This document shows, in pieces, positions 35,033 through 60,329 of a stretch of 64,000 nt of DNA; position 1 is the stretch's first letter, and each line of letters opens with the position of its first letter. The stretch is from IMG/VR virus record IMGVR_UViG_3300010885_076238, positions 1-64,000 of that record; one strand, written 5' to 3'. The notes under the pieces were generated by a model, which was not told the origin of the DNA, ran no database searches, and saw only the letters and a program-made list of their open reading frames with translations. The position numbers and the translations under genes are program-made.

Positions 35033-35060
35033 TTGACAACAAAAAAAATTCATGTATATT
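35033..35060 (+). promoter_or_regulatory. Sigma70-like promoter, 16-bp spacer
   Basis: TTGACA-N16-TATATT upstream of csrA copy 1. Confidence 0.65.
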
Positions 35061-35103
35061 GTTGTTGCTGTCTAATTTGTTCTCAAGAAAGGAATCTTTT
35101 ACA

Positions 35104-35286
35104 ATGCTTGTTCTTTCAAGGAAGATTGACGAATCTATATTAATTTCTAACAATATCGAATTGATAATTGTTGATATCATTGGAGATAAAGTTAAAATTG
35201 GAATCAATGCTCCGAAAGATGTTAGAATTCTAAGATCTGAAATCTATGAAAAATTGTGCAAAAAAAATATTGTGCAAAAAAAATAA
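35104..35286 (+). CDS. csrA: Carbon storage regulator CsrA (copy 1)
   Basis: MLVLSRKIDESILI...VKIGINAPKDVRILRSEI. Confidence 0.93.
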   Translation: MLVLSRKIDESILISNNIELIIVDIIGDKVKIGINAPKDVRILRSEIYEKLCKKNIVQKK

Positions 35287-35290
35287 TTTT

Positions 35291-35318
35291 TAAAGTATTT
35301 TTTTTACATGGTCGATAA
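35291..35318 (+). promoter_or_regulatory. Candidate sigma28-type promoter
   Basis: TAAAGTAT...GTCGATAA; 16 nt between TAAA and the -10. Confidence 0.35.
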
Positions 35319-35459
35319 CAGTACTACTTGGTTTATATCCAAGTTTTTTACTAATTTTTTAATTTTAGCTAATATTTCTTTAGATTCGCTAATTCTTTTC
35401 GGCAAAAATTTTGTCGGAAATTATCTTAATTTTAATCATTAATTAAATATTTTATTCAC

Positions 35460-35487
35460 TTTACTCCTTGAGTATTCGGCCTATAAT
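35460..35487 (+). promoter_or_regulatory. Sigma70-like promoter, 16-bp spacer
   Basis: TTTACT-N16-TATAAT. Confidence 0.65.
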
Positions 35488-35512
35488 CGTCTTAAACTGA
35501 ATGGAGTTGATT

Positions 35513-36151
35513 ATGAAAATTTTATTCCCGCCTCATCCAAACGTAAGAATTCCATCTCACAAATTAAGTGAGTATGAAAAAACTGGAAATTGGATTGCAC
35601 AAAGAAAATTCAACGGAACTAACGTTGTAATTTATGTGTCTTTAGATAGAAAAATTCATATTCTGACGAGACATGGAACTCCCCCTAAATTATTTTCTTT
35701 GAGCAAATCACACACAGATCAAATTTTGTCTCTAAATTTAGAGCAAGGAAAAGATTATTGGTTAAATGGAGAACTTCTGGATCATAAGACAAAAAATCCT
35801 GAATATAAGAAAAAAATCGTTTTATTCGATGTTCTTCATGCAGGAAGGTATTTGATCAAAAATCCCAATCAAGAAAAAAGATTGGAAATATTAAATGACA
35901 TTTGTAAAAATCCTACAAAATTAGAAAAAAATGGTTTGGCTTTAGAAATATCTGATGATATTTGGTTGGCAAATTCTTGGAAAAATGATTTTGAATTTCA
36001 TTATAAAGAGTATTTAGATCGAGATGAAATTGAAGGATTAGTTTTGAGGAAATTAAATTCATTTATAGATAATTTTGGACAAAAAGAACATGATGTTTCT
36101 TGGATCGTTAAGTGCCGAAAGCCCCACGCTGGAGGCAACTACAATTTTTGA
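35513..36151 (+). CDS. ATP-dependent ligase-type nucleotidyltransferase, adenylation domain only
   Basis: Motifs I QRKFNG, III LNGEL, IIIa VLFDV, IV EGLVLR, V WIVKCR; no OB-fold; GGAG SD before 35513. Confidence 0.8.
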   Translation: MKILFPPHPNVRIPSHKLSEYEKTGNWIAQRKFNGTNVVIYVSLDRKIHILTRHGTPPKLFSLSKSHTDQILSLNLEQGKDYWLNGELLDHKTKNPEYKKKIVLFDVLHAGRYLIKNPNQEKRLEILNDICKNPTKLEKNGLALEISDDIWLANSWKNDFEFHYKEYLDRDEIEGLVLRKLNSFIDNFGQKEHDVSWIVKCRKPHAGGNYNF

Positions 36152-36307: not shown

Positions 36308-36907
36308 ATGAAAATAAAAATTGGTTTAAAGCAGAAGACGGTTCAGTCAGTTGAAATCGCAGAAAAAATAAGCATCAAACCCAAGGAAATTTCTTGTGGG
36401 GTTGATGAACAAAAAAAATCTATTTCAAATGAATTAAATAATTCTGATATTGAAGAGCATATCAGACAATATTTCTTAACTCCCTTAAAAGAATTGATCA
36501 AAAATGAAGGAGTTAGCAATGGCTACTTAATTGCCAACGTGGAGGCTTTAGGTGTTATCAAAAAAATTATAAAATCCATACTAAAACAGAAGAAAATTTC
36601 AGTTATAGAAATTTTAGAAAAGGCCGCATTCGAAGAATATGGAGAATATAAAGAATCTGATGAGCCTGGAGAATATGAATCAGAAGAAGAATCTGTGGAA
36701 TATGAGTCCGAGGAATCTGACGAAGATGAGTCTGAAGCATCTGTAGAATCTTCTATTGTTCAAAAAGCCGTACTTGTCACCGAAGAGGAAGAAGAGGAAG
36801 AGGAAGAAGAGGAAGAAGAGGAAGAGGAAATTGACGAGTACGACTTGGAAGAGGCGAGAGAATGCGATTCATACTGTTTTAATGAAGATGAAAGTATGGA
36901 CGGATGA
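36308..36907 (+). CDS. Hypothetical protein with highly acidic C-terminus
   Basis: C-terminal ~90 aa dominated by E/D, including a poly-Glu run; ATGA overlap with tilS. Confidence 0.7.
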   Translation: MKIKIGLKQKTVQSVEIAEKISIKPKEISCGVDEQKKSISNELNNSDIEEHIRQYFLTPLKELIKNEGVSNGYLIANVEALGVIKKIIKSILKQKKISVIEILEKAAFEEYGEYKESDEPGEYESEEESVEYESEESDEDESEASVESSIVQKAVLVTEEEEEEEEEEEEEEEEIDEYDLEEARECDSYCFNEDESMDG

Positions 36908-37542
36908 TCAAAATAATTAAGGAAATTTTACCTAAAGATAAAAAATATTATTTTGCTGTTTCTATGGGGGTTGATAGTGTAGCTGCATATCTCTTTTTGA
37001 GGTCAAAAGGCTATAAGGTTACCCCTGTTCATTTTAATCATAAACTAAGAATTCAAAATGATCTGATGGAGCAGAAGTATATTGAATTATGTAAATTTAC
37101 CAATGTTGATCCAATTGTTGGACATGGCGAAAATTTAACAACAGAATCCGATTGTAGGAATGCAAGGTTGAATTTTTATAAACAATTTTGCCACAATGAA
37201 ACAATAATTACGGCTCATCATATGAACGATTGGATCGAGAGCTATTTATTAAACTGCTTCAGAGGTCAGCCAAATAACGATTGCATCGAATTAACTAGTG
37301 AATTCAAAAGCTTTAAAATAATTCATCCATTCCTTCTATCCAGAAAAAAAGATTTTGAACAGTATCTTGAACGCAACAACTATTTGTGCTATACTGTTCA
37401 AGACGAAACCAATTTCATTTGCAAAGGAAGTAGAAGAAATTGGATTCGGAAGCAGATTTTTCCTGAGATGATTAAAAATAAATTGTCTTTAGAAAAATTT
37501 GCTGAAAGAAAAATAAAAGGAGATTTAGTAGAAAGCATTTGA
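36904..37542 (+). CDS. tilS: tRNA(Ile)-lysidine synthetase, minimal catalytic domain
   Basis: AVSMGVDS PP-loop, HFNHKLR, RNAR, TAHHMND..E..L..FRG, DETN...RNWIR. Confidence 0.88.
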   Translation: MIKIIKEILPKDKKYYFAVSMGVDSVAAYLFLRSKGYKVTPVHFNHKLRIQNDLMEQKYIELCKFTNVDPIVGHGENLTTESDCRNARLNFYKQFCHNETIITAHHMNDWIESYLLNCFRGQPNNDCIELTSEFKSFKIIHPFLLSRKKDFEQYLERNNYLCYTVQDETNFICKGSRRNWIRKQIFPEMIKNKLSLEKFAERKIKGDLVESI

Positions 37543-37567: not shown

Positions 37568-37641
37568 GGGCCATTAACTCAGCTGGTTAGAGTGTCAAAC
37601 TCATAATTTGAAAGTCCTTGGTTCGAATCCAAGATGGCCCA
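37568..37641 (+). tRNA. tRNA-Ile2 (anticodon CAT, lysidine-modified type)
   Basis: Cloverleaf: acceptor GGGCCAT/ATGGCCC, anticodon stem TCAAA/TTTGA with loop CTCATAA, GGTTCGAATCC T-arm, A73, no encoded CCA. C4:G69 and C5:G68 present; no initiator features. Confidence 0.9.
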
Positions 37642-37713
37642 CTTCAGTCACTTTTGATTCCTCTACTTTTATCAAAATGAACTTCTCTGACTTCTAATTT
37701 TTTCACTTAGATA

Positions 37714-38499
37714 TTATGTCTTGTCTACAATCCAATGCGAGTTTCGATTCATGTAATATATTTTTTCTTTACCTAAGAGATATGTGTAGTGTAGCATCCA
37801 ATATTCACTCAAATTTTTGTAATAGAAAGAAGTAGAGAAATTTGGGAAAATTATTTTTGGAATTGTATAAACATTCATGTTTAGTGGAGTAATTTTTTGA
37901 TTTATGAAATTTTGATTTCCACTATAATTCTTAATATCTTCTTTGTTATAAGAAAGAAGTTCAATAATTTTGTCTTTTTTTTCGCTATTGAAAACCATGA
38001 AGCCTGTGCAATAGTTATCGCATTTTCTCTTTTTTACCAATACGCCATCAATTAGATCGCAACACTCATCGGTGCCATTTAAATAATCTTCGCCATCTTG
38101 AAAAATAATATCAAAAGGATCGCTTTTTTTCTTCAACATATTTTTTAATATTTTATCTAACTCTTTGGTGAAGTTAAAGTTCACCCAAATATCAGTGTCT
38201 ATATAAGTTACGAAAGGATAGTTTTTACTTTCTTGCTCAATAAATTTTTTCTTTATATCCAGCTTATTGAATACTATTTCTTTATATTTTTTTGTTTCCC
38301 ACTGATGAAACTTTTCAGATAAATTTTTGTTTTCTACTAACTCACAATCAGCTCCTTCTTTTTTTAACTCTTCGTAACAAATGTTATCCGTACAAATAAA
38401 AACTAATTTCGAATCTATTTTTAATTGCTTCCATCTTTTGTAGAAATTAAAAGCAAAATATTTGTACCCATTGTTTATTATTGCGAAAAATATATTCAT
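37714..38499 (-). CDS. Nucleotide-diphospho-sugar transferase (GT77-like)
   Basis: YIDTDIW, IIFQD, CTGFM, NQ, FPN, LHY. Confidence 0.8.
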   Translation of the reverse strand: MNIFFAIINNGYKYFAFNFYKRWKQLKIDSKLVFICTDNICYEELKKEGADCELVENKNLSEKFHQWETKKYKEIVFNKLDIKKKFIEQESKNYPFVTYIDTDIWVNFNFTKELDKILKNMLKKKSDPFDIIFQDGEDYLNGTDECCDLIDGVLVKKRKCDNYCTGFMVFNSEKKDKIIELLSYNKEDIKNYSGNQNFINQKITPLNMNVYTIPKIIFPNFSTSFYYKNLSEYWMLHYTYLLGKEKIYYMNRNSHWIVDKT

Positions 38500-39257
38500 A
38501 GCACTCCCTTTGTAGGATAGTCTAAATTATTGTTTCTTATTTTATTTATCATTAACGAGAAAGAGCTTTCGTTTGACCCAATAAAATAACGACAACTTTG
38601 CAAGATAAAAAAATCAGCTATAGTGTGGATATCGCTTGTATATCTAACAACTTTTTTTCTATCATACATACCTTCAAACTTTTCTTCTCCTTTGCTTATT
38701 CTCTCGAACAATATTATTCTATCTTTGAATATTTCGATGAATTTTCTTTGAGTTTCTGCGTTATCTGTTGCTAAGAAAATTTTTTTATCATTAGTCTCTA
38801 GAAATCTTACAATAGCTCTTTGAGGAATCGGTTTATCTCTTGTCTTATCAGACATCAACAGTGCTGTCTTGCAACCCGTTCTTATGTGCAGACCGATAGT
38901 TTCTTTGATTTTAAATTTTTCAACAAAGTCTTGAAAAAAGTTCTTATATTCTTCTTTTAATTTCAAATAGCTATAGGCTTGTCTGAACAAATCTGTAGAA
39001 GAGTTACACTTAAATGTTTCCATCATTTTTTTAAACGAAGTGGTTTTTATAACATCATCCGCTTCTGTTAATTTTTCAAATTTCAAAGAAGGAAGATAGT
39101 CGAAAAATTTTAAAAATTCTACTAAGTTATGGTTGTTTACAATCCATTCTTGCGTTGCTTCGCTTGCAATTTTTTTTTCAACCAAAAGATTCGCAGCCAA
39201 TGACAGTCTTAGTTGATTTGCAAATCCATCTGGGCATTTTATATAAATTTTATTCAT
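38496..39257 (-). CDS. Fucosyltransferase-like protein (GT23/NodZ-type)
   Basis: GFANQL, IGLHIRTG, IFLATDN, DFFIL, SSFS. Confidence 0.75.
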   Translation of the reverse strand: MNKIYIKCPDGFANQLRLSLAANLLVEKKIASEATQEWIVNNHNLVEFLKFFDYLPSLKFEKLTEADDVIKTTSFKKMMETFKCNSSTDLFRQAYSYLKLKEEYKNFFQDFVEKFKIKETIGLHIRTGCKTALLMSDKTRDKPIPQRAIVRFLETNDKKIFLATDNAETQRKFIEIFKDRIILFERISKGEEKFEGMYDRKKVVRYTSDIHTIADFFILQSCRYFIGSNESSFSLMINKIRNNNLDYPTKGVL

Positions 39258-40197
39258 ATTTTTCTACCAAAAAATTAGAAGTATAAAACGCCTCTTTTAA
39301 ATGAAGTACATTTGAAAATTCATGCCAATTCATCTGTACTTTACACTTAGACTTATCTACTCCTTGTGAAAGCCTTATAGAATAATGTCCTGGCTCTTTA
39401 AGTTCAAGCTTTATGGTTTCTCTTTCATAATGGCACCAAACATCCCATATTGGGTATTTACTTAAAATTTTTCCATCCTTATAAATTTCCACACAATCAG
39501 AGTAGGGACCAATAGTTTGAAAAATGCCTATTAATTCGTCTTCAACATAAATATCAATAAAATTTTTAACACTTATGTTTAATTCTTTTATTAGTATTTC
39601 TGTATATTTATTTTTTAATGGACAGACTATGTTGTAATTCGAGTGCAATGGCTCATCAGGGTGGTTGAATACGTTGTGCTCTAGGTGTTGGAATATTTTT
39701 GAGGAATAATAATTTCCTCCAAATTCTGTGGTATGAACATAGTCCTTAATTATTTGACTAATCTCTATTTTATCTTCTAAAAATTCTTCATAAACATTTA
39801 TGCAATGAATATTGTGTTCAGAAGAATATTTTTTAACGTCATCATACATCTCAAGTCTTGAGTTTAGCATTTCACTTATTGGGAAAAGCAAAAAAATTGG
39901 AGTTATATTGTTTTTTAAAAGTTTAAAAGTTATACAATCAAGATATTCAAAAATTTTCTTATCATAATTAGTTCTAGAAGTTGAAAACCAATCAATTAAA
40001 CATATTTCTGGTTTGTATTCTATTACTTCTTCTATAAAGCAAATTCCCGCATCCGATAAATGCATAGATCCATAGCCGAACTTCCTATACTCTGCTTGCA
40101 CCATTGACATGAGCGAATCTGCGTATGAGTTATTTTGCTTCGTAACAGATGCTCCGAAGAAAGCTATTTTATTGTATGTTATTTTCATATATTTCAA
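39250..40197 (-). CDS. SGNH/GDSL hydrolase-like protein
   Basis: FFGASVT block I, DYVHTT DxxH. Confidence 0.7.
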   Translation of the reverse strand: MKYMKITYNKIAFFGASVTKQNNSYADSLMSMVQAEYRKFGYGSMHLSDAGICFIEEVIEYKPEICLIDWFSTSRTNYDKKIFEYLDCITFKLLKNNITPIFLLFPISEMLNSRLEMYDDVKKYSSEHNIHCINVYEEFLEDKIEISQIIKDYVHTTEFGGNYYSSKIFQHLEHNVFNHPDEPLHSNYNIVCPLKNKYTEILIKELNISVKNFIDIYVEDELIGIFQTIGPYSDCVEIYKDGKILSKYPIWDVWCHYERETIKLELKEPGHYSIRLSQGVDKSKCKVQMNWHEFSNVLHLKEAFYTSNFLVEKYE

Positions 40198-40375
40198 TCA
40201 ATGCTAGTATTATCTCGTTTTCTTGCAAGTAGTATGACTCTTTATCATATGGATCTTTGATTAGTTCAAAAAAATATGGATTTTTACTTAATTGTATTTG
40301 AGTCTCAAGTATAAAAAAATCTTTATCTTCAAATAACTTTTTCTTATATTCTTCAATATTCATTATCTTCTTCAT
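40169..40375 (-). CDS. Hypothetical protein
   Basis: ORF within a tight minus-strand operon. Confidence 0.55.
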   Translation of the reverse strand: MKKIMNIEEYKKKLFEDKDFFILETQIQLSKNPYFFELIKDPYDKESYYLQENEIILALIEIYENNIQ

Positions 40376-40541
40376 CCTTTATTTGATAAAAATAATCATT
40401 ATAGTCTAGATTGTTATCATAGTCTTTTTTTTTGGCATCATCTATGTAATTCTTCGCTTCATCTAAAGATAGAAAATTTTTGCGATAAATTTCTTTAAAT
40501 ATATCTGCGTATCCCTCGTATTTGATTACTAAAAATTTCAT
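40353..40541 (-). CDS. Hypothetical protein
   Basis: ORF within a tight minus-strand operon. Confidence 0.5.
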   Translation of the reverse strand: MKFLVIKYEGYADIFKEIYRKNFLSLDEAKNYIDDAKKKDYDNNLDYNDYFYQIKDEEDNEY

Positions 40542-41232
40542 AAAATTCTTTCTTGAAAAAATCTAAACTCATTTCGAAACTATTGTTTTTTATTTCTTTA
40601 CCACTGTGTTTATTATTGATTAATAAATGATATTTTCCCTCACAGAATTTAGATATTTTTTTGTAACAATTAGAATTAAACCCATTATTTAATTCTAATA
40701 TTTTTGTTTTTTTACTGCAAAAAATAATATTGGTTAGCCCTGCTCCGTGAGAAGCGACAACACAATCGGCATTATACATAATGTTTGCTTGTTGTTCTAC
40801 TGAATAATTTTCTAAAAATATTTCTACGAAATCTTGTTGGGCCAAAAAGTCTAATATTTCTTTAGAAATATATCTATTGTTCCTTTTTATTATAATTTTT
40901 TTATGACTATTTTCTATATTTGATCTTATTTGCTTTAAATAACAAGCCAATTCTTCATTAATGCTATTTTTTATTTCTTCGTATTTAAAGGCGACTTTAT
41001 CAGATGGATCAAAAGAACTTAATACATTTATTGTTTTTTCTTTATATAATTCTTTTAAAATTTTTTCGATCAATAAAATTTGATCATTTGGCAGATCAAA
41101 AAATAAATCAAAAGAATTAAAGTTTTTGTATATTTCGTGAATAATTGGTAAAAAATCAATTATTGCATGATGATAATTTGATACTTGTTTTGAATCTAAA
41201 AATATGAACTTTTTTGATGATTTGCTACTCAT
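40495..41232 (-). CDS. GT61 (DUF563-like) glycosyltransferase
   Basis: NYHH, IKRNNR, EQQA..M, VASHGAGLTN. Confidence 0.85.
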   Translation of the reverse strand: MSSKSSKKFIFLDSKQVSNYHHAIIDFLPIIHEIYKNFNSFDLFFDLPNDQILLIEKILKELYKEKTINVLSSFDPSDKVAFKYEEIKNSINEELACYLKQIRSNIENSHKKIIIKRNNRYISKEILDFLAQQDFVEIFLENYSVEQQANIMYNADCVVASHGAGLTNIIFCSKKTKILELNNGFNSNCYKKISKFCEGKYHLLINNKHSGKEIKNNSFEMSLDFFKKEFYEIFSNQIRGIRRYI

Positions 41233-42238: not shown

Positions 42239-42754
42239 CTAATCTATTTCTCCAAGTATTATTTCAGGGTATTTTTCACTTATTATTTCTTGGACTTGAA
42301 TGTTATTTATTTCTTCAAACTTCTTTGTAATGGCATTCAAGATATAGTCATCTTTTTCTTCTGCTGACATTGTGTTTAATACTTGGATGGCATATTTATT
42401 TATAAAATAATTCCTGTTGTGATCAACTACATATCCATCCATATTTTTAATCTCTTCTTCTACAACGTATTTGTCTAATTCTCGTAGATCTATTTCTTCA
42501 TCTCTTCCTCGGAGTTGATTATTTTTTTTTATTTTTTCTGTTTTTAATTTTTCAAACTCTTCTCTACACCCACAGAGTCCAAGGTTTTTACCAAAAAAAA
42601 TATAGTGATAAAACAATCTTTGTCGCTCTGTTATGCTATTTTCCCGGCAGTATGGTTGGTAAAAACTTTTTACATCACCAGTTTGCGTTATATAAAATTC
42701 ATCATCAAAATTTTTTTCTATAAGATTTTTTTCGTAAAACTCAATGATTTCCAT
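42239..42754 (-). CDS. Hypothetical protein
   Basis: Heads the minus-strand operon. Confidence 0.6.
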   Translation of the reverse strand: MEIIEFYEKNLIEKNFDDEFYITQTGDVKSFYQPYCRENSITERQRLFYHYIFFGKNLGLCGCREEFEKLKTEKIKKNNQLRGRDEEIDLRELDKYVVEEEIKNMDGYVVDHNRNYFINKYAIQVLNTMSAEEKDDYILNAITKKFEEINNIQVQEIISEKYPEIILGEID

Positions 42755-52535: not shown

Positions 52536-52543
52536 AAAATATA

Positions 52544-53452: not shown

Positions 53453-53459
53453 TTTTTCC

Positions 53460-54475: not shown

Positions 54476-54503
54476 TTGACAGAAAAAAAATATTTAGTAT
54501 AAT
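54476..54503 (+). promoter_or_regulatory. Sigma70 consensus promoter, 16-bp spacer
   Basis: TTGACA-N16-TATAAT. Confidence 0.75.
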
Positions 54504-54810: not shown

Positions 54811-54838
54811 TTTACAATCTTGAATTGCGACCTATGAT
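54811..54838 (+). promoter_or_regulatory. Sigma70-like promoter, 16-bp spacer
   Basis: TTTACA-N16-TATGAT. Confidence 0.6.
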
Positions 54839-54989: not shown

Positions 54990-56024
54990 ATGGCTAAGAA
55001 GATTGATATTGTGAAGAAGTCTGAAACCAAGCCCGAAGCAGCATCTAAGTCTGATGCCGCTCATTCCATTCCTATGGGTGGGGATCGTGAAGCTCCTCGC
55101 AAGCATAGTAAGGTTGTGGATCGCTTTAGGACGAAGGTGAAGCCTTCTACTAAGGAGGTCAAGGCTGACGCTCGTCCAGTCATCGATATTGATGACGAGA
55201 CGAAGGAAAAGTTTGTAGAATTCGCTGCTACCAAGGAACTTTTTGACATTTTTGAGGCCAGCAAAAAGAGTCAGACGGCAGATATTTATGGGGCCATTTT
55301 TGAAAAGTATAAGGATACTTTGTGGCGTTCCAAGACTCAGCCTAAGAATCCTTCTATCAAGGTTCAAAATTTGGATGGAAGTCTTGAAGCCGAAGGTCAG
55401 TTTATTGTTCAAGTTGGAACTAGAATTAAGATTAATATGCCAGAGGTTCCAGAAGATGAGTTGCCGGAAGATGTCCTTCTTAAGGCGCTTGTCGATCTTG
55501 GCGTAAAGAAGAGCAATGCGGCTCGTATTATTGAAGATGAGGTTTCATTCGTTCCTCAGTGGAGTCTTAACTTCACAGATATGCTCAATGGCGTGATGGT
55601 TGAAGGAAAGTTGCAGCCTGCAACAGACCCTCAGATTTCTGCTTCCGAGCTTCTTTTTCAGGTTATAAATGGTCAGGATGAAGATGGAATTGAATTAAAT
55701 TCTAAGTCTCGTCTTGATATGTTGAAAAAGATTTCGGAAGAAGGTTGGGTATTGATCAAGCAGAATGTGGAAAGTCATACCAAATACTTTCCGCAGCTTG
55801 TTGACGGTGCGGATTTTCTTGATAGAGTTTGCAATTACGCAGAATCTAAGGATGAATTGGATTCTATTCTGACAGTTTTCTGCCCTGTGCATTTCTGTCA
55901 GAGAGTCAAGTTTGCTTGTAGTGACGCTCCTGCCGATAAGACCGCAAGGCTTTTGTCGGAAGCAGAAGCTACTATTACCGGCAAGCCGAATGATGATGAA
56001 GTTGAAAGAGCTTATAAAAAGTGA
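54990..56024 (+). CDS. Hypothetical protein with Lys-rich N-terminus and host-like codon usage
   Basis: AAGGAG SD before ATG 54990; AAG/GCT/CGT-rich codons. Confidence 0.8.
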   Translation: MAKKIDIVKKSETKPEAASKSDAAHSIPMGGDREAPRKHSKVVDRFRTKVKPSTKEVKADARPVIDIDDETKEKFVEFAATKELFDIFEASKKSQTADIYGAIFEKYKDTLWRSKTQPKNPSIKVQNLDGSLEAEGQFIVQVGTRIKINMPEVPEDELPEDVLLKALVDLGVKKSNAARIIEDEVSFVPQWSLNFTDMLNGVMVEGKLQPATDPQISASELLFQVINGQDEDGIELNSKSRLDMLKKISEEGWVLIKQNVESHTKYFPQLVDGADFLDRVCNYAESKDELDSILTVFCPVHFCQRVKFACSDAPADKTARLLSEAEATITGKPNDDEVERAYKK

Positions 56025-56040
56025 AAATTAGGAGTGCGTG

Positions 56041-56358
56041 ATGAGAAAAAAGTCTAGAACCGATATTATCAGAGAACACTTGCTTTCTGCAAAATCATTT
56101 GAACAAAGCCCAAATGCTGTTGTTCAGGATTTGAAGAAAAAGGGAGTTGATGTTACTGTTCATCATGTTGGAATGGTGAAACTCTCTATTAGAGGCAAAA
56201 GAGTTTTGAAGAGAATCGGTAATAGAAGTGGTCGTAGCGGTAGAACTAAGAAAAATTCTGGATTATTTATTGCCAAAGATCTTTTGAAATCTTGTAATAA
56301 TAATCTCGATTTGGCTTTGCAAAATTTGAAAGTTGTTGCCAAGCTAATGAATGATTAG
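56041..56358 (+). CDS. Planctomycete-type small DNA-binding protein (paralog)
   Basis: SRTDIIREHL...PNAVVQDLKKKGVDVT; C-terminal LFIAKDLLK...LALQNL. Confidence 0.7.
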   Translation: MRKKSRTDIIREHLLSAKSFEQSPNAVVQDLKKKGVDVTVHHVGMVKLSIRGKRVLKRIGNRSGRSGRTKKNSGLFIAKDLLKSCNNNLDLALQNLKVVAKLMND

Positions 56359-56410: not shown

Positions 56411-56770
56411 ATGGCTGAAAAGGAAGTGGTTAATCGGTCTCAGGCGATTCGTGAATATTTGAATTCGGTGAAGCCGTCTGATCGTGGCCCTAGGGCTGTT
56501 AGCGAAGCTTTGAAGGCTAAGGGTCTTAGCGTTAGCCCACAGCTTGTCTCCCAGGTTAAAACTTCTTTGAATAAGAAAACTTCTTCAAAGAAGAAGGGTC
56601 GAGTTTATGATTCTTCTTTTTCAAAGAAGATTAAGAAGTCTCGTCCAGATTGGTTTCAATTGGAAAGTGTTGACACTTTGATTAGTGCCAAGAATCTTCT
56701 TAAGTCTGTTGGTGGAGATTTGAATGCTGCAAAAAAGAATTTAGAAATCATTTCTAAGCTCTTGTCGTAA
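56411..56770 (+). CDS. Planctomycete-type small DNA-binding protein (paralog)
   Basis: VNRSQAIREYL...GPRAVSEALKAKGLSVSPQLVSQVK; LISAKNLLKSVGG. Confidence 0.75.
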   Translation: MAEKEVVNRSQAIREYLNSVKPSDRGPRAVSEALKAKGLSVSPQLVSQVKTSLNKKTSSKKKGRVYDSSFSKKIKKSRPDWFQLESVDTLISAKNLLKSVGGDLNAAKKNLEIISKLLS

Positions 56771-56841: not shown

Positions 56842-57192
56842 ATGAAAATTGACAAATCTTTAATCTTAATTGCTGTATTTTCAATTGTATCTTGGGAGAT
56901 ATTTTGTTATCAAAATAATCAAATCAAAGTATTGAAAGAATTTGTTGAAATAAATAAAAAATCTCAAGAAATTAACGAAGATGAAATTAGAGATTTAATT
57001 TGTGCAGTTCAAGAAGAAAAAAACAAAAATGAGGGAATTGCTACTCGCAACTATGTCGCTGGAATTTTGGATGGAGTGAATAAAAAAGACTACTACGCCG
57101 AGGTTTGGCATAAAGGATTCGATAGTGGCATTCAAAATAAAATTTTAATAGGAGAATCTGAAAAGGCATATGTTGTGAATAAAGGCGAATAA
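56842..57192 (+). CDS. Hypothetical protein with N-terminal TM anchor
   Basis: LILIAVFSIVSWEIF followed by a coiled region; AAGGA SD. Confidence 0.7.
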   Translation: MKIDKSLILIAVFSIVSWEIFCYQNNQIKVLKEFVEINKKSQEINEDEIRDLICAVQEEKNKNEGIATRNYVAGILDGVNKKDYYAEVWHKGFDSGIQNKILIGESEKAYVVNKGE

Positions 57193-57198
57193 AAATTA

Positions 57199-57356
57199 AT
57201 TTAAGGTGTTATGGATTGGATTGGGATTGCCCACAATCAAAGATAGTGCTTTGATTGAGCAATAACTTAAGCGAGCATAGTTGGTCACTCCAATGATTTT
57301 TGGGAAAGTGAGCGTTGTCGCGTCTCAAAAATAGCACCAATCCATAACCCTTAAAT
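57199..57356 (+). ncRNA. Unclassified structured RNA candidate
   Basis: 20-bp closing stem (57199-57219 with 57337-57356), second stem with G-U pairs, 9-bp hairpin 57234-57257, hairpin 57285-57311. Confidence 0.45.
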
Positions 57357-58046
57357 AAATTTAGGCTTTCTTTTAATTATGCTTGTTGTATCATCAAATA
57401 ATAAAAGATCGTCAATTGATCCTATTAATCCATCTGCTAAGATTTGAATCATTTCATCATTTTCTCTTAATTCTTTGACAATTTCAATTTGCATAGAATG
57501 GACATGGTTGTTAGGATACCATATTCTAAATAATTGATTCATATTGTTTTTCGAACGCCCAGAATATTTTCCTCTTTTTTTTCCTTCATAAACACCGAAC
57601 GATTCGTTTTCTAAAAAATAACAAAAAGCATCTTTTATACGAAGATCACAAGTATATGAAGAAGGATTTCCTTCTCCGTAACCTATAATTAAGTCTAAGT
57701 TTTGATCGGCAACTTCATTTTTTACGCTATTACTGCATCCATGTAAATAAAAAATATAAACTCTGTTGTCTATTTTTTTTAGAATTCTAGCTGTCATTCT
57801 TAGAATTTGTTCTAAAAATTCTTCTTTTATAACATCTTCGTGAACATGACCAACATGATTGCAGTCTGCTTCATCTGCAAAATAATTAAATTTTTTATTT
57901 CTTTTCCATCCTCTGTTTATAACGGCAAAAGCTCCCATCTCAGAGGCAACAGTGTCCGCAATCAAGGCGGTATTTGTATCGTCTAGACCATGGGGAGCAA
58001 CCAAAATTACCGGGATGTCTCCATTTATCAGACTTACTCTTTCCAT
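57351..58046 (-). CDS. N-formylglutamate amidohydrolase / poly-gamma-glutamate-hydrolase-like Zn hydrolase
   Basis: PVILVAPHG, FYLHG, SMQIEI; AAGGAG SD. Confidence 0.6.
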   Translation of the reverse strand: MERVSLINGDIPVILVAPHGLDDTNTALIADTVASEMGAFAVINRGWKRNKKFNYFADEADCNHVGHVHEDVIKEEFLEQILRMTARILKKIDNRVYIFYLHGCSNSVKNEVADQNLDLIIGYGEGNPSSYTCDLRIKDAFCYFLENESFGVYEGKKRGKYSGRSKNNMNQLFRIWYPNNHVHSMQIEIVKELRENDEMIQILADGLIGSIDDLLLFDDTTSIIKRKPKFI

Positions 58047-58184
58047 AAAATTTACTCCTTATTTTTCAATATTATAGTTGTTTTATAAATTTAAAAATAC
58101 TTTAAACAAACTTTAATTTATTGTGCATAAATTTTTTTTATTCTCGACCGTTATGTCGATAGACACCTGTACAAGGAGATAAAA

Positions 58185-59198
58185 ATGATGATTCCATATG
58201 TTCCAATAAACGAAAATCGTCGAGAAGAACTTCAAATTGATCTTTCGAATTGTAATAAAACCTTAAAAAAGTATTACAAACAAGTTGCTCATCGAAAAGG
58301 AAGCAGGGGATTTGTAACTAGCAACAACGAAAGTATTAATAGACCCAAATATTACAAACAAATATTGGGTGCGTATAGAAGTTGTCCCACGGCAGATATT
58401 AATTTGCACGGAGTCTTAATTCCAAATTGTGATGTTAGGGCAATAGTTTTTCTTGAAGATATTAGATGGGAAATTCTAACATCTATTTCGGGAATGCTCA
58501 CTGGGCTTGCCAATAAGAAAAACAAAAGCAAGAGTCTTTGTGATTCTGCGTTATCTTTTGAGGATTTGGAAAGTGAAGCTTTCAAGTCTGCCCTTTCCTC
58601 TATTCACTCTTACGCAAAAGAAAAGATTTGTTTTTCTACATATTTTTATGTTTGTGCAAACAGACACATCAGCAGCTTGTGCAGTAGATCTAATTCTATG
58701 TCTAAACTTAGCAAAAAATCAATTAAACTAAAAAGAAGATACATAGAAGTTCAAAAGTCTTTAGGAAGAAACTCTAATTTTGAAGAAGTTGTTGAACTTA
58801 TGAATTTGAAAGAAAATGAAATTGAACTTCTCCGATCTACATTGAATTGTTTCGTTTCTCATCACGATGAAAAAACTACAATGAGTAAGCATTACGCTGG
58901 AGTTGATGGGGCGAAACATTATTCTTCCTCTGGGAAAAGGGGTGGGGATTTGATTTTATCTTCAAATAATACTTTTGTAGAATCGTTAGATGATAAAGAG
59001 ATTGGAGGCATGAATCTCACCGATTTGGAAAAAGCTGTCTTAGAAGGATTTATGCAATCTTCTAGCAAACTAGGAATAAACTCCGTTGCTAAGAATGTTG
59101 TCAATCCTAAGACTGGCAAGCCTTTTTCAAGGATGGCTGTGACTTATGCTTGGAGAAGGGTAAAAGAGAAAATCAATAACTTCAGGAAAGTTGCCTAA
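58185..59198 (+). CDS. Divergent sigma70-family RNA polymerase sigma factor
   Basis: Region 2 (FEDLESEAF...Y..EKICFSTY...NRHI), region 3 (QKSLGRNSNFEEVVELMNL), region 4 (LTDLEKAVL...INSVAK...SRMAVTYAWRRVKEKI); AAGGAG SD. Confidence 0.75.
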   Translation: MMIPYVPINENRREELQIDLSNCNKTLKKYYKQVAHRKGSRGFVTSNNESINRPKYYKQILGAYRSCPTADINLHGVLIPNCDVRAIVFLEDIRWEILTSISGMLTGLANKKNKSKSLCDSALSFEDLESEAFKSALSSIHSYAKEKICFSTYFYVCANRHISSLCSRSNSMSKLSKKSIKLKRRYIEVQKSLGRNSNFEEVVELMNLKENEIELLRSTLNCFVSHHDEKTTMSKHYAGVDGAKHYSSSGKRGGDLILSSNNTFVESLDDKEIGGMNLTDLEKAVLEGFMQSSSKLGINSVAKNVVNPKTGKPFSRMAVTYAWRRVKEKINNFRKVA

Positions 59199-59204
59199 TA
59201 CATC

Positions 59205-60329
59205 ATGCAGAAACATCTTAATTTTTTGGTTCCGAGTTTAGACGCTAGAAGAAATTTTATTCAATCTGGCCAGTGTAATTTGAATTCTTTCATTGGAAAT
59301 GAGGAGGCAATAAGGCGCCTTTCTAGAGCGGTTTTTTCTGCCATTGGAAAAGAAGACCACTGCTGTTCGGACTATTCTTTTGCTTTGTGCGGGCCACCAT
59401 CTACCGGCAAGACTTATCTTGCAAAACTATTTGCCAAGACATTGTCTATACCTTTTGTTGTTATCGAACCGCAGACAGTGAAAAAAGTTGATGATATTTT
59501 CTTTGAAACCCAAAAGGCAATTACCGAGCATTATCAAAAGCTTGGACTAAACTTTGAATTATTTGACTTTGGCGACAAAGTTTATTGTCCTCCTCCTTGT
59601 GTTGTTTTTATCGATGAGGTTCACAATCTAAAATCAAATGTTGTTCAAGGTTTATTGAAGGCGACAGAGCCAAACGATAGACTTATGATTACTGAAGAAG
59701 GAAGTACGATTCATACAAATAATATCTGTTGGGTGATAGCAACCACAGATAGAGGCGATTTGTTCGATGCTTTTGATACAAGATTTCAAAAAGTATTTCT
59801 AAGACTGTATTCCAAGAAAGAAATTTCTAAAATTATCAACTCCAACAACCCAGATTGGAGCGAGGAGATTTGCGATATTGTTTCAAACTATAATTCACAA
59901 GTTCCAAGAGAAGCTATTGCTTTTGCAAAAGACATGAGGGTTGAACAAGAAATGAATCCAAGAGATTGGAAATTCGTTGCTCAATCTGTTGCAAGGGATC
60001 ACGGAATTGATGAATTTGGAATGAGCCAAATAAGAGTTGATATTCTTAAAGCATTGGGTCAATCTCCAATGTCTGCATCGCAACTTCCATTTGTTGCACA
60101 TGTAAAAGAAGATGAACTTAGAAAGTATATTATGCCCCCACTTCTCTCTAGAACCCCAGATCAAGCGATTCCCATGGTTACAGTCTCGACCAAAGGGTAT
60201 ACAATAACCATTGCTGGAATTGACGAGCTAAATAAGAGAGGGATTAGAAACAGGGGTTTAGAGGCTATTCCAGAAAGCGTTAGACATTCTTTCGTAAAAG
60301 AAGAAGAAAAGGAGATTTCTTATGCCTGA
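59205..60329 (+). CDS. RuvB-like AAA+ ATPase
   Basis: FIGNE, CGPPSTGKT, FIDEVHNL, IATT.RG...TRF, VPR sensor 2, GIDEFG, C-terminal winged helix. Confidence 0.85.
   Translation: MQKHLNFLVPSLDARRNFIQSGQCNLNSFIGNEEAIRRLSRAVFSAIGKEDHCCSDYSFALCGPPSTGKTYLAKLFAKTLSIPFVVIEPQTVKKVDDIFFETQKAITEHYQKLGLNFELFDFGDKVYCPPPCVVFIDEVHNLKSNVVQGLLKATEPNDRLMITEEGSTIHTNNICWVIATTDRGDLFDAFDTRFQKVFLRLYSKKEISKIINSNNPDWSEEICDIVSNYNSQVPREAIAFAKDMRVEQEMNPRDWKFVAQSVARDHGIDEFGMSQIRVDILKALGQSPMSASQLPFVAHVKEDELRKYIMPPLLSRTPDQAIPMVTVSTKGYTITIAGIDELNKRGIRNRGLEAIPESVRHSFVKEEEKEISYA

What the first reader, a model, noticed from the sequence alone, without database searches (positions are those of the whole stretch)
35033..60329. 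Candidate multi-layer host-takeover system in a probable planctomycete jumbo phage
Seen: one window carries a sigma factor, a free alpha-CTD, three related nucleoid-protein-like genes, two CsrA, ClpX and TilS with tRNA-Ile2. Many sit behind near-consensus sigma70 promoters and use host-like codons. Established: these families act on promoter choice, activation, chromosome structure, mRNA translation, proteolysis and AUA decoding. Inference: an early host-RNAP-driven set rewires every layer of expression so a very AT-rich late programme can run in a GC-richer host. I know of no description of this combination.
Basis: partly seen in the sequence, partly recalled or inferred. Interest (0 to 1): 0.75.

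Follow-up and report, generated by a model that had tools for sequence, protein, structure and literature searches.

The report
Conserved regulatory gene block, jumbo phage
A 204-kb, very AT-rich virus of bacteria, probably of planctomycetes, carries a block of regulator genes copied from bacteria in an order kept in related viruses; most of these gene types are already known in giant phages, but a stand-alone piece of the RNA polymerase alpha subunit and three planctomycete-type DNA-binding proteins are not.

Summary
The genes are real. Region 35-60 kb holds two CsrA genes, a complete ClpX, a free alpha-CTD, a divergent sigma70-family factor, three related HTH proteins, and a TilS-like enzyme next to a tRNA(CAU). 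The TilS-like protein has only the catalytic N-domain.

The window is the first 64 kb of IMG/VR contig 3300010885_076238 (204 kb, 30% GC). The gene set is not scattered. A 173-kb relative keeps the whole order, and two more (154 and 487 kb) keep the ClpX-to-sigma part.

Five near-consensus sigma70 promoters are conserved in position across genomes. A subset of genes (o356, the HTH proteins, partly ClpX, sigma and its partner AAA+) avoids AUA, UUA, AGA and AAA. This bias is also conserved in relatives.

The HTH family occurs almost only in Planctomycetota (79 of 80 genome hits), which supports that host. No direct host link exists.

Expression timing and functional integration remain untested. 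The general idea that huge phages redirect host expression is published, and phage CsrA, TilS, ClpX and sigma are known. I found no precedent for the free alpha-CTD or the phage-borne planctomycete HTH proteins.

Verdict: a new variant of a known kind, with the takeover story partly supported.

The parts
35033..35060 (+). Promoter-like site TTGACA-16-TATATT (11/12) upstream of CsrA1
   Evidence: The same position in relative L132 reads TTGACG-17-TATCAT.
35104..35286 (+). CsrA paralogue 1 (60 aa from the ATG; the listed ORF starts at TTG 35059)
   Evidence: PF02599 77.7 bits; translation. Homologues lie next to an RNA ligase in L005, L008, L017, L024 and L132.
35501..36151 (+). RNA ligase-family protein (PF09414)
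   Evidence: It is syntenic with CsrA in relatives.
36308..36907 (+). Acidic poly-Glu protein of unknown function; its end overlaps the TilS-like start by 4 nt
   Evidence: Translation; homologue in L132.
36904..37542 (+). TilS-like PP-loop enzyme, catalytic N-domain only (212 aa), motif SMGVDS
   Evidence: PF01171 82.2 bits; TIGR02432 92.2 against cut-off 93.6. The best PDB hits are TilS 1WY5 and 1NI5. It is conserved in L130 and L132.
37568..37642 (+). tRNA with anticodon CAU, candidate tRNA-Ile2 (called Met by ARAGORN), 25 nt after the TilS-like gene
   Evidence: The same pairing occurs in L131, with four compensatory stem changes and an identical anticodon stem-loop.
37714..42754 (-). AT-rich glycosyltransferase island (O-FucT, GT61, GT90 and unknowns); an insertion relative to L132, not part of the regulatory set
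43508..43705 (-). CsrA paralogue 2, 69-75% identical in distant huge-phage contigs
   Evidence: PF02599 55.4 bits.
43896..43923 (+). Promoter TTGACA-16-TATAGT (11/12) with a ~95-nt conserved 5'UTR, upstream of NAP229
   Evidence: L132 has TTGACG-16-TATAGT with the same flanks.
44014..44703 (+). NAP229: planctomycete-type HTH domain (residues ~70-115) with different N- and C-terminal regions. GC3 0.45, followed by a strong terminator at 44714-44752
   Evidence: It is 80% identical in L131 and hits 35 planctomycete loci by tblastn.
45071..45622 (+). Secreted Cys-rich protein of unknown function, GC3 0.41, terminator at 45638-45671
   Evidence: 40% homologue in L008.
47868..49130 (+). ClpX unfoldase with the ClpP-docking IGF loop
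   Evidence: 78-83% identical in close relatives.
49131..49391 (+). Small Cys-rich (zinc-ribbon-like) protein between ClpX and alpha-CTD
   Evidence: homologue in L124.
49388..49415 (+). Promoter TTGACT-16-TATACT (10/12) upstream of alpha-CTD
   Evidence: The same position in L124, L126 and L127 scores 11, 12 and 12 of 12.
49435..49722 (+). Free RNAP alpha C-terminal domain (about 95 aa), no alpha N-domain
   Evidence: PF03118 26.7 bits against 23.8. All 34 PDB hits are alpha CTDs, best 1DOQ at 4.8e-5. It is invariant in 46 columns across four genomes.
49719..50780 (+). Classical AAA ATPase (BCS1/Cdc48-like) with an unknown N-domain; its start overlaps the alpha-CTD stop
   Evidence: 37 relatives in IMG/VR.
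50746..54344 (-). Second AT-rich minus-strand island (GT11, GDP-mannose dehydratase, two unknowns)
54476..54503 (+). Perfect promoter TTGACA-16-TATAAT (12/12) upstream of o87
   Evidence: It is conserved in L124 (12/12), L126 (11/12) and L127 (11/12) while the flanks diverge.
54811..54838 (+). Second conserved promoter TTTACA-16-TATGAT upstream of o356
54990..56024 (+). o356: unknown, strongly conserved (61-80%), the most codon-biased gene (GC3 0.40; 1 ATA in 21 Ile codons)
56038..56358 (+). NAP106, member of the planctomycete-type HTH family
56411..56770 (+). NAP119, member of the planctomycete-type HTH family; terminator at 56782-56821
57351..58046 (-). o231, unknown, divergent from sigma; the pair is also conserved in more distant contigs
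58185..59198 (+). Divergent sigma70-family factor (337 aa) with an N-terminal extension. It evolves faster (37-57% identity) than its neighbours (61-80%)
59205..60329 (+). RuvB-like AAA+ ATPase directly after sigma (abutting or overlapping it in relatives)

Best explanation
Region 35-60 kb is a conserved, plus-strand regulatory block of a clade of large, AT-rich tailed phages that most likely infect Planctomycetota. Two variable glycosyltransferase islands interrupt it.

**Four sub-modules**
- A: CsrA1, an RNA ligase, an acidic protein, a TilS-like enzyme and tRNA(CAU).
- B: CsrA2 placed divergently from NAP229, plus a secreted protein.
- C: ClpX, a zinc-ribbon protein, a free alpha-CTD and a BCS1/Cdc48-like AAA ATPase.
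- D: o87, o356, NAP106, NAP119, then o231 (-), a sigma70-family factor and a RuvB-like AAA+ ATPase.

**Shown**
- The family assignments.
- The synteny in relatives.
- Five positionally conserved consensus sigma70 promoters.
- A conserved codon-usage split.

**Inferred mechanism**
- After injection, the host primary-sigma RNAP reads the consensus promoters.
- The first products (o356 and the HTH proteins) avoid AUA, UUA, AGA and AAA, so an unmodified, GC-richer host can translate them.
- The HTH proteins are phage copies of a host-lineage DNA-binding family and act on DNA.
- The free alpha-CTD competes with the RNAP alpha-CTD for UP-element DNA or for activators. Its translationally coupled AAA ATPase may assist.
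- ClpX works with host ClpP on the proteome.
- The two CsrA copies bias translation.
- The phage sigma retargets core RNAP to phage promoters.
- The TilS-like enzyme plus tRNA(CAU) raise AUA-decoding capacity for the bulk of phage genes, which use AUA at 39 per 1000 codons.
For: **Identity**
- Window coordinates equal the coordinates of the 204,311-bp IMG/VR contig.
- Family assignments.
- The sigma fold matches sigmaA chains (E 7e-5, probability 1.0).

**Synteny**
- The full A-D order is kept in JBJKNJ010011967.1, a 173-kb contig.
- Modules C and D are kept in the 154.5-kb and 487-kb contigs, at 37-83% amino-acid identity.
- CsrA, RNA ligase, glyoxalase and ClpX co-occur in more distant IMG/VR contigs and in the 595-kb LR756511.1.
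- The o231-sigma pair is found in six more contigs.

**Promoters**
- The hexamers are conserved while the flanks diverge.

**Codon split**
- ATA is 44% of Ile codons in the AT-rich majority against 11% in the biased genes. AAG is 17% of Lys codons against 71%.
- The same genes are biased in three relatives.
- Planctomycete loci use ATA for 7% of Ile codons and AGA for 3% of Arg codons.

**Host**
- The HTH family has 918 representatives.
- 79 of 80 genome loci are Planctomycetota, including isolates of Rhodopirellula and Zavarzinella.
- NAP119 aligns over its full length to 66 of those loci. The Atlas search agrees.

**tRNA**
- The tRNA(CAU) is kept next to the TilS-like gene, with compensatory stem changes.

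**Phage nature of the wider clade**
- The large ORFs scanned, which lie within about 10 kb of AAA353 in IMG/VR relatives, match a major head protein family (2.6e-82), ribonucleotide reductase, helicase and homing endonucleases.
Against: - There is no expression, proteomic or host-linkage data.
- The total number of sigma70-like sites is at chance level. Only the best few stand out.
- The codon bias covers only part of the set. CsrA2, alpha-CTD, AAA353 and TilS are not biased.
- The biased genes are not truly host-like, since ATT and CTT/TTG are preferred rather than ATC and CTG.
- The phage-host GC gap would be very large (0.30 against 0.47-0.67).
- ClpX gives no host signal.
- The TilS-like protein lacks tRNA-binding domains and has a variant PP-loop.
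- The tRNA type cannot be decided. Its nearest phage tRNAs are tRNA-Lys at 83% identity.
- In L130 the TilS-like gene has no tRNA nearby.
- No terminase, portal or capsid gene lies in the window. All the 'structural' PHROG hits come from one Ig-like domain of one protein.
- Conserved gene order may reflect only shared ancestry.
Confidence: 0.55

Rival explanations
1. This is an ordinary accessory repertoire. The genes are independent acquisitions, each useful on its own and as seen in many jumbo phages. They sit together only because the relatives share ancestry. There is no coordinated 'system' and no common early timing.
For: - Each family, except alpha-CTD and the HTH proteins, is already known in phages.
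- The sub-modules separate in more distant relatives. AAA353 occurs without alpha-CTD, and TilS sits elsewhere in L130.
- Codon bias and strong promoters cover only some of the genes.
Against: - The order is conserved across four genomes down to 37% sigma identity, even though islands are inserted and lost between the modules.
- The gene pairs alpha-CTD/AAA353 and sigma/AAA374 overlap or abut.
- The consensus promoters are conserved.
Confidence: 0.25
2. The codon-biased, promoter-driven genes (o356 and the HTH proteins) are very highly expressed phage chromatin, scaffold or virion-internal proteins rather than early takeover factors. The bias reflects expression level, not timing.
For: - The strongest bias is in small basic DNA-binding-type proteins and one abundant-looking unknown protein.
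- Each of these has a strong terminator.
- Bias tied to expression level is well established in general (own knowledge).
Against: - Consensus TTGACA/TATAAT promoters point to the host primary sigma, which is typical of early classes.
- A highly expressed late gene would be expected to match the phage-supplied tRNA pool, that is AT-rich codons, and not to avoid them.
Confidence: 0.12
3. The host is not a planctomycete. The HTH family entered the phage lineage by old horizontal transfer, and the phages infect some AT-richer bacterium, so the 'GC-richer host' premise fails.
For: - Phage and planctomycete copies are only 35-41% identical.
- No cellular genome carries the phage-type version.
- The GC gap is about 28 points.
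- ClpX neighbours are Acidobacteriota, Actinomycetota and Bacteroidota, not Planctomycetota.
- The genome scan used patterns taken from planctomycete-type members, which biases it.
Against: - The family is essentially restricted to Planctomycetota in two independent resources.
- The phage keeps two to three copies in every close relative.
- The avoided codons are exactly those that are rare in planctomycete loci.
Confidence: 0.3
4. The contig is cellular, plasmid-like or a chimeric assembly rather than a phage.
For: - No terminase, portal or capsid gene lies in the 64-kb window.
- The 'structural' PHROG hits reduce to one domain of one protein.
- There are many sugar-metabolism genes.
Against: - The contig is an IMG/VR viral contig.
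- GC is uniformly about 30%, apart from islands that are conserved in relatives.
- T4-type Rnl1, HNH and tail-fibre-like segments are present.
- The 38 related viral contigs reach 459 kb, and the large ORFs scanned from them match a major head protein family, ribonucleotide reductase and homing endonucleases.
- No rRNA or housekeeping genes are present.
Confidence: 0.04

Closest known systems
Huge-phage 'redirection of host biosynthesis' gene sets (Al-Shayeb et al. 2020, PMC7162821)
   Same: - Large phage genomes that carry their own sigma70, tRNAs, tRNA-modification and tRNA-repair enzymes, interpreted as interception of host expression.
- One genome of that set, LR756511.1, shares an RNA ligase, CsrA, glyoxalase and ClpX neighbourhood with the window.
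   Different: - That paper does not mention CsrA, Clp or Planctomycetes.
- Here there are no ribosomal proteins, initiation factors or CRISPR in the window.
- The emphasis here is on transcription (sigma, free alpha-CTD, HTH proteins) and on a codon-usage split.
Phage-encoded CsrA/RsmA homologues (Campa et al. 2021, PMC8450108)
   Same: Full-length CsrA domain genes in phage genomes. They were reported to correlate with hosts that have CsrA.
   Different: There are two divergent paralogues per genome here. One is tied to an RNA ligase and the other lies divergent from an HTH gene whose 5'UTR is rich in GGA. Function is untested.
TilS in jumbo phage vB_PaeM_MIJ3 (PMC6892783) and cellular TilS (PDB 1WY5, 1NI5)
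   Same: - The PP-loop N-domain is most similar to TilS.
- TilS features prominently in the MIJ3 jumbo-phage paper, with the term in its abstract and 22 mentions in the text. I did not read the paper itself.
   Different: - Only 212 aa, with no C-terminal tRNA-binding domains.
- The motif is SMGVDS.
- It is paired with its own tRNA(CAU), and this pairing is conserved in a relative.
Bacterial RNAP alpha subunit C-terminal domain (for example T. thermophilus 1DOQ, E. coli 1COO/1LB2)
   Same: - The double helix-hairpin-helix domain.
- The R..N.L and PNxGK(K/R) positions that form the DNA-binding '265 determinant' in E. coli are kept (alignments; residue roles from own knowledge).
   Different: - It is free-standing, with no N-terminal assembly domain or linker, so it cannot be an RNAP subunit in the usual way.
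- It is translationally coupled to an AAA ATPase.
- There is no match in 50,697 GenBank phage records and only the window's own contig in IMG/VR.
T4-type temporal control of host RNAP (alpha-CTD ADP-ribosylation by Alt/ModA, AsiA/MotA, gp55/gp33 with the clamp; PMC2988021)
   Same: Strong sigma70-type early promoters, manipulation of alpha-CTD function, a phage sigma for later classes, and an AAA+ protein next to the sigma. The last point recalls the clamp-loader dependence of T4 late transcription (own knowledge).
   Different: No homology to Alt, ModA, AsiA, MotA or gp55 was detected. The alpha-CTD is supplied as a protein rather than modified. The analogy is functional and untested.
ClpX in large phages (for example Bacillus phage G gp258)
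   Same: A complete ClpX is encoded by many large phages: 192 phage records match, 58 of them over at least 80% of the length.
   Different: Here it sits in a fixed array with a zinc-ribbon protein, alpha-CTD and an AAA ATPase. No ClpP gene lies in the window.

Membership tests
CsrA/RsmA (PF02599) | Full-length CsrA domain above the curated score | tested here: met
   77.7 and 55.4 bits against cut-off 27, covering profile positions 1-51 and 1-53 of 53.
CsrA/RsmA (PF02599) | Conserved C-terminal Arg of the RNA-binding strand (E. coli R44; role from own knowledge) | tested here: met
   'ILRSEI' and 'ILRSEL' are present in both copies and in the L132 CsrA2; the L132 CsrA1 reads 'IFRSEI', so the Arg itself is kept.
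CsrA/RsmA (PF02599) | Binds GGA motifs in mRNA leaders | not testable with these tools
   Only a lead: there are GGA motifs in the conserved NAP229 leader.
ClpX | N-terminal C4 zinc finger, AAA+ module and D2-small domain | tested here: met
   PF06689 37.9, PF07724 103.7 and PF10431 40 bits.
ClpX | Pore-1 GYVG loop, RKH loop and the ClpP-docking IGF loop (roles from own knowledge) | tested here: met
   GYVGED, GGRKHP and QIGFGS are all in the translation.
TilS (tRNA-Ile lysidine synthetase) | TilS-type PP-loop N-domain at equivalog-domain score | tested here: inconclusive
   TIGR02432 92.2 against cut-off 93.6. The best PDB hits are TilS.
TilS (tRNA-Ile lysidine synthetase) | Canonical SGGxDS PP-loop | tested here: not met
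   It reads SMGVDS or SMGIDS in all three phage copies. The variant is conserved, so it is not decay.
TilS (tRNA-Ile lysidine synthetase) | C-terminal tRNA-binding domain(s) | tested here: not met
   The protein ends at 212 aa. The alignment to 1WY5 stops at residue 221 of 317.
TilS (tRNA-Ile lysidine synthetase) | Lysidine formation at C34 | not testable with these tools
   Needs an enzyme assay and mass spectrometry.
tRNA-Ile2 (CAU, lysidine-modified) | CAU anticodon in an elongator-type, non-initiator body | tested here: met
   G1-C72 is paired and there are no three G-C pairs in the anticodon stem (sequence; rules from own knowledge). Rfam tRNA 70.7 bits.
tRNA-Ile2 (CAU, lysidine-modified) | Features that separate it from elongator tRNA-Met | tested here: inconclusive
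   - C4-G69 and C5-G68 are as in E. coli tRNA-Ile2 (own knowledge) and are conserved in L131.
- ARAGORN calls it Met.
- BLAST against E. coli genomes found nothing, and against phages the nearest are tRNA-Lys.
- The context next to the TilS-like gene is the main argument.
RNAP alpha C-terminal domain (PF03118) | Domain match above the curated score; specific hits to alpha CTDs | tested here: met
   26.7 against 23.8 bits. 34 of 34 PDB hits are alpha CTDs.
RNAP alpha subunit (RpoA) | N-terminal dimerisation and core-assembly domain | tested here: not met
   The protein is about 95 aa. The NCBIfam rpoA models match only their last ~70 positions. It is a free domain, not an RpoA.
Sigma70 family | Region 2 at the Pfam gathering score | tested here: inconclusive
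   23.2 against 24 bits for the window protein. 14 of 25 homologues match at E down to 6e-6.
Sigma70 family | Overall sigma fold (sigma2 to sigma4) | tested here: met
   - AF2 model with pLDDT 77.
- Nearly all of the top 50 Foldseek hits are sigmaA, sigmaS or sigmaB chains, E from 7e-5, probability 1.0.
- The profile aligns to sigmaF 1L0O over positions 92-282.
Sigma70 family | Binds core RNAP and directs promoter recognition | not testable with these tools
   No target promoter motif could be defined.
Nucleoid-associated protein | Small basic protein with a DNA-binding fold | tested here: inconclusive
   The model shows a three-helix N-domain, a Lys-rich disordered linker and a helical hairpin. 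The best structural matches are HTH domains (sigma54 RpoN box, ArgR, Fur), but at E about 2.
Nucleoid-associated protein | Abundant, low-specificity DNA binding that shapes the chromosome | not testable with these tools
   No described function was found for the planctomycete family. There is no Pfam, NCBIfam or PHROG model.
Jumbo (>200 kb) tailed phage | Genome or contig over 200 kb | tested here: met
   The contig is 204,311 bp. Its completeness is unknown.
Jumbo (>200 kb) tailed phage | Virion and packaging hallmark genes | tested here: inconclusive
   - None lies in the window beyond one Ig-like virion domain and tail-fibre-like segments.
- A match to the major head protein family appears among the large ORFs scanned from more distant relatives.
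Early (host-RNAP) gene class | Consensus sigma70 promoter conserved in relatives | tested here: met
   Five promoters. This is not met for ClpX, TilS or sigma.
Early (host-RNAP) gene class | Transcribed first after infection | not testable with these tools
   There is no culture and no transcriptome.

The most novel reading that the evidence does not exclude
A clade of planctomycete-associated giant phages uses two devices not described before.
1. A free RNAP alpha-CTD, translationally coupled to a BCS1/Cdc48-like AAA unfoldase, acts as a decoy or adaptor that strips UP-element- and activator-dependent transcription from the host.
2. Phage copies of a planctomycete-specific HTH protein family, expressed first from consensus host promoters with codons tuned to the naive host, take over DNA organisation before a phage sigma and an AUA-decoding kit (minimal TilS plus tRNA) switch expression to the AT-rich genome.
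Probability: 0.2. Interest if true: 0.75.

Novelty: new variant of a known kind. Interest (0 to 1): 0.5.

Why it matters
- Planctomycete phages are almost unstudied. A gene family restricted to that phylum offers a practical host marker for a whole clade of 150-490 kb phages.
- I found no description of a free alpha-CTD in a virus. If it titrates UP elements or activators, it would be a new way to disable host transcription and a useful reagent.
- The conserved split between genes that avoid AUA, UUA, AGA and AAA and genes that use them heavily sits beside a minimal TilS and its own tRNA. This is a clean natural test of how a 30% GC virus can express itself in a host of nearly 60% GC.
- Without expression data, the region remains a well-annotated jumbo-phage regulatory block rather than a demonstrated system.

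Tried and rejected
- **Megablast against phages.** The region found nothing among 50,697 phage records.
- **tblastn of single proteins against phages.** Sigma, alpha-CTD and NAP119 all gave no match.
- **First genome-contig scan.** Patterns from the phage-type C-terminal helix found no relatives. Two broader alignments were too variable to give patterns.
- **ClpX as a host marker.** The Atlas neighbours are all at 0.99 across many phyla, which is uninformative.
- **Typing the tRNA.**
  - BLAST against E. coli genomes gave no match.
  - Against phages the nearest are tRNA-Lys.
  - No CAU tRNA lies in 50 planctomycete loci or 10 phage loci for comparison.
- **o356.** No family, no informative Atlas hit and no structural lead.
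- **Structural search of the HTH model.** No significant hit.
- **A phage-specific (late) promoter motif.**
  - TTGTGC is enriched (54 against 23) but is mostly intragenic and not clearly positioned.
  - Inspecting upstream regions by eye gave no consensus.
- **A second sigma.** L124 has one about 10 kb downstream, but it is not at the matching place in this contig.
- **Alpha-CTD in distant relatives.** No alpha-CTD lies upstream of AAA353 in the 37 more distant relatives.
- **'Structural genes' in 1-35 kb.** The first PHROG scan suggested many, but a second showed that they all come from one domain of one protein.
- **Walking along the 173-kb relative for hallmark genes.** This gave only more sugar-modification genes.
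- **Chimeric assembly.** I considered and rejected this: the GC-richer islands and their codon bias recur in three independent relatives.

Full report
**Where the window comes from**

The sigma-like protein and the AAA ATPase at 49719-50780 both map to IMG/VR contig IMGVR_UViG_3300010885_076238 (204,311 bp). They sit at the same coordinates there as in the window, so the window is the first 64 kb of that contig. GC is about 0.30 throughout. There is one tRNA and no other Rfam family. Exact copies of the sigma region also occur on short contigs from two JGI metagenomes and one SRA run.

**What is in 35-60 kb**

Pfam, NCBIfam and PHROG scans, together with the translations, give the following.

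| Coordinates | Gene | Key evidence |
|---|---|---|
| 35104-35286 (+) | CsrA1 | PF02599 77.7 bits |
| 35501-36151 | RNA ligase-family protein | PF09414 |
| 36308-36907 | acidic poly-Glu protein | translation |
| 36904-37542 | TilS-like PP-loop protein, 212 aa | see below |
| 37568-37642 | tRNA(CAU) | 25 nt after the TilS-like gene |
| 37714-42754 (-) | glycosyltransferase island | O-FucT, GT61, GT90 |
| 43508-43705 (-) | CsrA2 | PF02599 55.4 bits |
| 44014-44703 | NAP229 | related to NAP106 and NAP119 |
| 45071-45622 | secreted Cys-rich protein | unknown function |
| 47868-49130 | ClpX | see below |
| 49131-49391 | Cys-rich 86-aa protein | zinc-ribbon-like |
| 49435-49722 | free alpha-CTD | see below |
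| 49719-50780 | classical AAA ATPase | best PDB matches BCS1 and Cdc48 |
| 50746-54344 (-) | second island | GT11, GDP-mannose dehydratase |
| 54532-54771, 54990-56024 | o87 and o356 | unknown function |
| 56038-56358, 56411-56770 | NAP106 and NAP119 | related small basic proteins |
| 57351-58046 (-) | o231 | unknown function |
| 58185-59198 | sigma-like protein | see below |
| 59205-60329 | RuvB-like AAA+ ATPase | |

**How firm each assignment is**

- *ClpX* is complete. It has the zinc finger, [15 protein letters not shown], the ClpP-docking IGF loop and the sensor-2 region.
- *The alpha-CTD* is above the Pfam cut-off. A profile built from the four available sequences hits only RNAP alpha CTDs in the PDB (34 of 34, best 1DOQ at 4.8e-5).
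  - The R..N.L and PNFGK(R/E) positions are invariant in the four genomes. In E. coli these make the DNA-binding surface (own knowledge).
  - There is no alpha N-domain, so this is a free domain and not an RpoA.
- *The sigma* is weak by sequence: region 2 scores 23.2 against 24 bits, and phrog_351 gives 1e-7.
  - 14 of 25 homologues hit region 2, and the family profile hits sigmaH and sigmaF in the PDB.
  - An AlphaFold model (pLDDT 77) retrieves sigmaA, sigmaS and sigmaB chains as nearly all of its top 50 matches (E from 7e-5, probability 1.0).
- *The TilS-like protein* is closest to TilS (TIGR02432 92.2 against 93.6; PDB 1WY5 and 1NI5).
  - It stops after the catalytic domain, and its motif reads SMGVDS instead of SGGxDS. 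That variant is conserved in all three phage copies.
- *The tRNA* is not an initiator. It carries C4-G69 and C5-G68, as E. coli tRNA-Ile2 does (own knowledge). I could not separate it formally from elongator tRNA-Met.

**The three 'nucleoid-like' proteins**

They share an N-terminal motif (IREYL..P..V..LK.KG..V...VS.VK). NAP119 has close homologues of 109-131 aa. An HMM search finds 918 representative proteins, many with two or three tandem N-domains.

The model shows a three-helix bundle, a disordered Lys-rich linker and a C-terminal helical hairpin. The structural matches are HTH domains, but none is significant. A DNA-binding role is therefore plausible. 'Nucleoid-associated' is not shown.

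The family's distribution is the most informative result. A scan of one genome per species returned 80 loci, and 79 were Planctomycetota (Pirellulales, Planctomycetia, Gemmatales), including isolates of Rhodopirellula and Zavarzinella. NAP119 itself aligns over its full length to 66 of these loci at 35-41% identity. The Atlas search agrees. One caveat applies: the scan's patterns came from planctomycete-type members.

**Is it a phage?**

The window has no terminase, portal or capsid gene. A first PHROG scan seemed to show many structural hits. A second scan showed that they all come from one roughly 80-residue domain of the 859-aa protein at 1231-3810, which also has a subtilase domain. Tail-fibre-like segments occur in that protein and in the one at 4112-5461.

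Support for a phage comes from several directions:
- the contig is in IMG/VR;
- T4-type Rnl1, UvdE and HNH genes are present, and no cellular core genes are;
- AAA353 has 37 relatives on viral contigs of up to 459 kb;
- the large ORFs taken from those 21-kb loci around AAA353 include matches to a major head protein family (2.6e-82), ribonucleotide reductase, thymidylate synthase, helicase, SbcC and homing endonucleases;
- the window shares an RNA ligase, CsrA, glyoxalase and ClpX neighbourhood with the published 595-kb phage LR756511.1.

I put a cellular or chimeric origin at a few per cent.

**Co-occurrence in relatives**

- JBJKNJ010011967.1 (173 kb) has the same order from end to end: CsrA1, RNA ligase, acidic protein, TilS-like, tRNA(CAU), then CsrA2 (-), NAP229 (80% identical), then glyoxalase, GT2, ClpX, zinc-ribbon, alpha-CTD, AAA, then o87, o356, NAP, o231 (-), sigma, AAA+, UvdE and Rnl1.
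- Two further contigs (154.5 and 487 kb) keep the part from ClpX or alpha-CTD to sigma.
- Identities are 61-83% for most proteins, but only 37-57% for sigma and 41-65% for the small HTH proteins.
- The glycosyltransferase islands differ between genomes.
- More distant contigs keep only pieces: CsrA with RNA ligase, CsrA2 with glyoxalase and ClpX, and o231 with sigma. They lack alpha-CTD and the HTH proteins.
- The tRNA next to the TilS-like gene in the relative differs by four compensatory stem changes, while the anticodon stem-loop is identical.

**Promoters**

The total number of sigma70-like sites is what shuffled sequence gives. Sites with 11 or 12 matches out of 12 number 7 against 3.6 +/- 1.8, and all are on the plus strand.

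Comparison with relatives is decisive here. The hexamers upstream of o87 score 12, 12, 11 and 11 of 12 in the four genomes. Those upstream of alpha-CTD score 10, 11, 12 and 12. Those upstream of o356 (TTTACA-16-TATGAT), NAP229 and CsrA1 also hold their place while the surrounding intergenic sequence diverges. ClpX, TilS and sigma have no such promoter.

**Codon usage**

GC3 is about 0.2 for most genes. It is 0.38-0.45 for NAP229, sec183, o356 and NAP119, and 0.29-0.33 for ClpX, sigma and AAA374.

| Codon share | AT-rich majority | Five most biased genes |
|---|---|---|
| ATA among Ile | 44% (39 per 1000 codons) | 11% |
| AAG among Lys | 17% | 71% |
| AGA among Arg | 71% | 38% |
| TTA among Leu | 42% | 9% |

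The same genes show the same bias in three relatives, so the bias is maintained by selection and is not a trace of recent transfer.

Long ORFs in the planctomycete loci (GC 0.58) use ATA for 7% of Ile codons, AGA for 3% of Arg codons and TTA for 4% of Leu codons. The biased phage genes avoid those codons but do not adopt ATC, CTG or CGC. 'Host-like' is therefore true only in a relative sense. CsrA2, alpha-CTD, AAA353 and TilS are not biased.

**Interpretation**

The best reading is a conserved regulatory block of a clade of large phages, probably of Planctomycetota.
- Part of the block is read by host RNAP from consensus promoters and is translatable without phage help: o87, o356, the HTH proteins, CsrA1 and alpha-CTD/AAA.
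- The rest supplies a phage sigma, proteolysis and AUA decoding.
- The steps from gene content to mechanism are all inferred: alpha-CTD as a decoy, the HTH proteins acting on DNA, CsrA on leaders, sigma on late promoters, and lysidine formation.
- Rival readings remain open, as does a non-planctomycete host. The genes may be independent accessory genes, or the bias may reflect high expression rather than early expression.

**Comparison with the literature**

- Al-Shayeb et al. (PMC7162821) already describe huge phages with their own sigma70, tRNAs and tRNA-modification and repair enzymes that 'redirect' host biosynthesis.
- Campa et al. (PMC8450108) report many phage CsrA genes.
- TilS features prominently in the paper on jumbo phage MIJ3 (PMC6892783). 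I saw only its title and abstract listing.
- ClpX occurs in 192 phage records.
- Planctomycete-infecting phages, including fragments over 300 kb, have been inferred in one lake enrichment (PMC9040852).
- I found nothing on a free alpha-CTD in a virus, and nothing on the HTH family.

The finding is therefore a new variant of a known kind.

Noticed in passing
window, whole; e.g. 35254, 35270, 54368-54373(-), 58121: The hexamer TTGTGC occurs 54 times against 23 +/- 4.7 in shuffles. Seven copies lie 29-92 nt upstream of gene starts, including those of sigma and o294. Two tandem 'TTGTGCaaaaaaaa' copies follow the CsrA1 stop. Its meaning is unknown.
   Followed up: partly
window 7149-54344 (e.g. 7149-8240, 12560-13330, 17500-18423, 22298-23764, 38496-42238, 47017-47781, 50746-52535): There is a very large glycan-synthesis repertoire. 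It includes glycosyltransferase families better known from eukaryotes (GT61, GT90, GT11, O-FucT, GT34). It also includes UDP-galactopyranose mutase, GDP-mannose dehydratase, epimerases and a carbamoyltransferase. The two AT-richest islands are variable insertions between conserved blocks.
   Followed up: partly
window 1231-3810: An 859-aa protein has a short domain (residues ~311-398) shared with many phage virion proteins, plus a C-terminal subtilase. It accounts for all the 'structural' PHROG hits in the first 35 kb.
   Followed up: yes
window 43924-44013 and L132:12330-12443: The NAP229 gene has a ~95-nt leader that is conserved between genomes. It carries GGA motifs, one of them at the ribosome-binding site, and the gene lies divergent from CsrA2. 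It is a possible CsrA target.
   Followed up: no
window 29416-30288: A leucine-rich-repeat protein in the most AT-rich gene of the window (GC 0.20). An LRR protein also occurs at the matching place in the 173-kb relative.
   Followed up: no
window 35501-36151 and 62236-63204: There are two RNA ligases of different families (PF09414 type and T4 Rnl1 type). This suggests tRNA repair alongside the TilS-like enzyme and the tRNA.
   Followed up: no
L005:34798-34871 (LR756511.1): The 595-kb phage that shares the CsrA and ClpX neighbourhood carries a tRNA with anticodon CTA, an amber suppressor type.
   Followed up: no
L084:7223-7296, L088:7200-7274, L105:7283-7356: In three planctomycete genomes the HTH-family gene lies about 2.2 kb upstream of a tRNA-Cys. 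This suggests a stable chromosomal context rather than a mobile element.
   Followed up: no
L124:19856-20728: The 173-kb relative has a second, more canonical sigma factor (regions 2 and 4) about 10 kb downstream of the first. No counterpart lies at the matching place in this contig.
   Followed up: partly
window 8219-8950: An HNH endonuclease gene overlaps the end of the UDP-galactopyranose mutase gene. It is probably a homing element.
   Followed up: no
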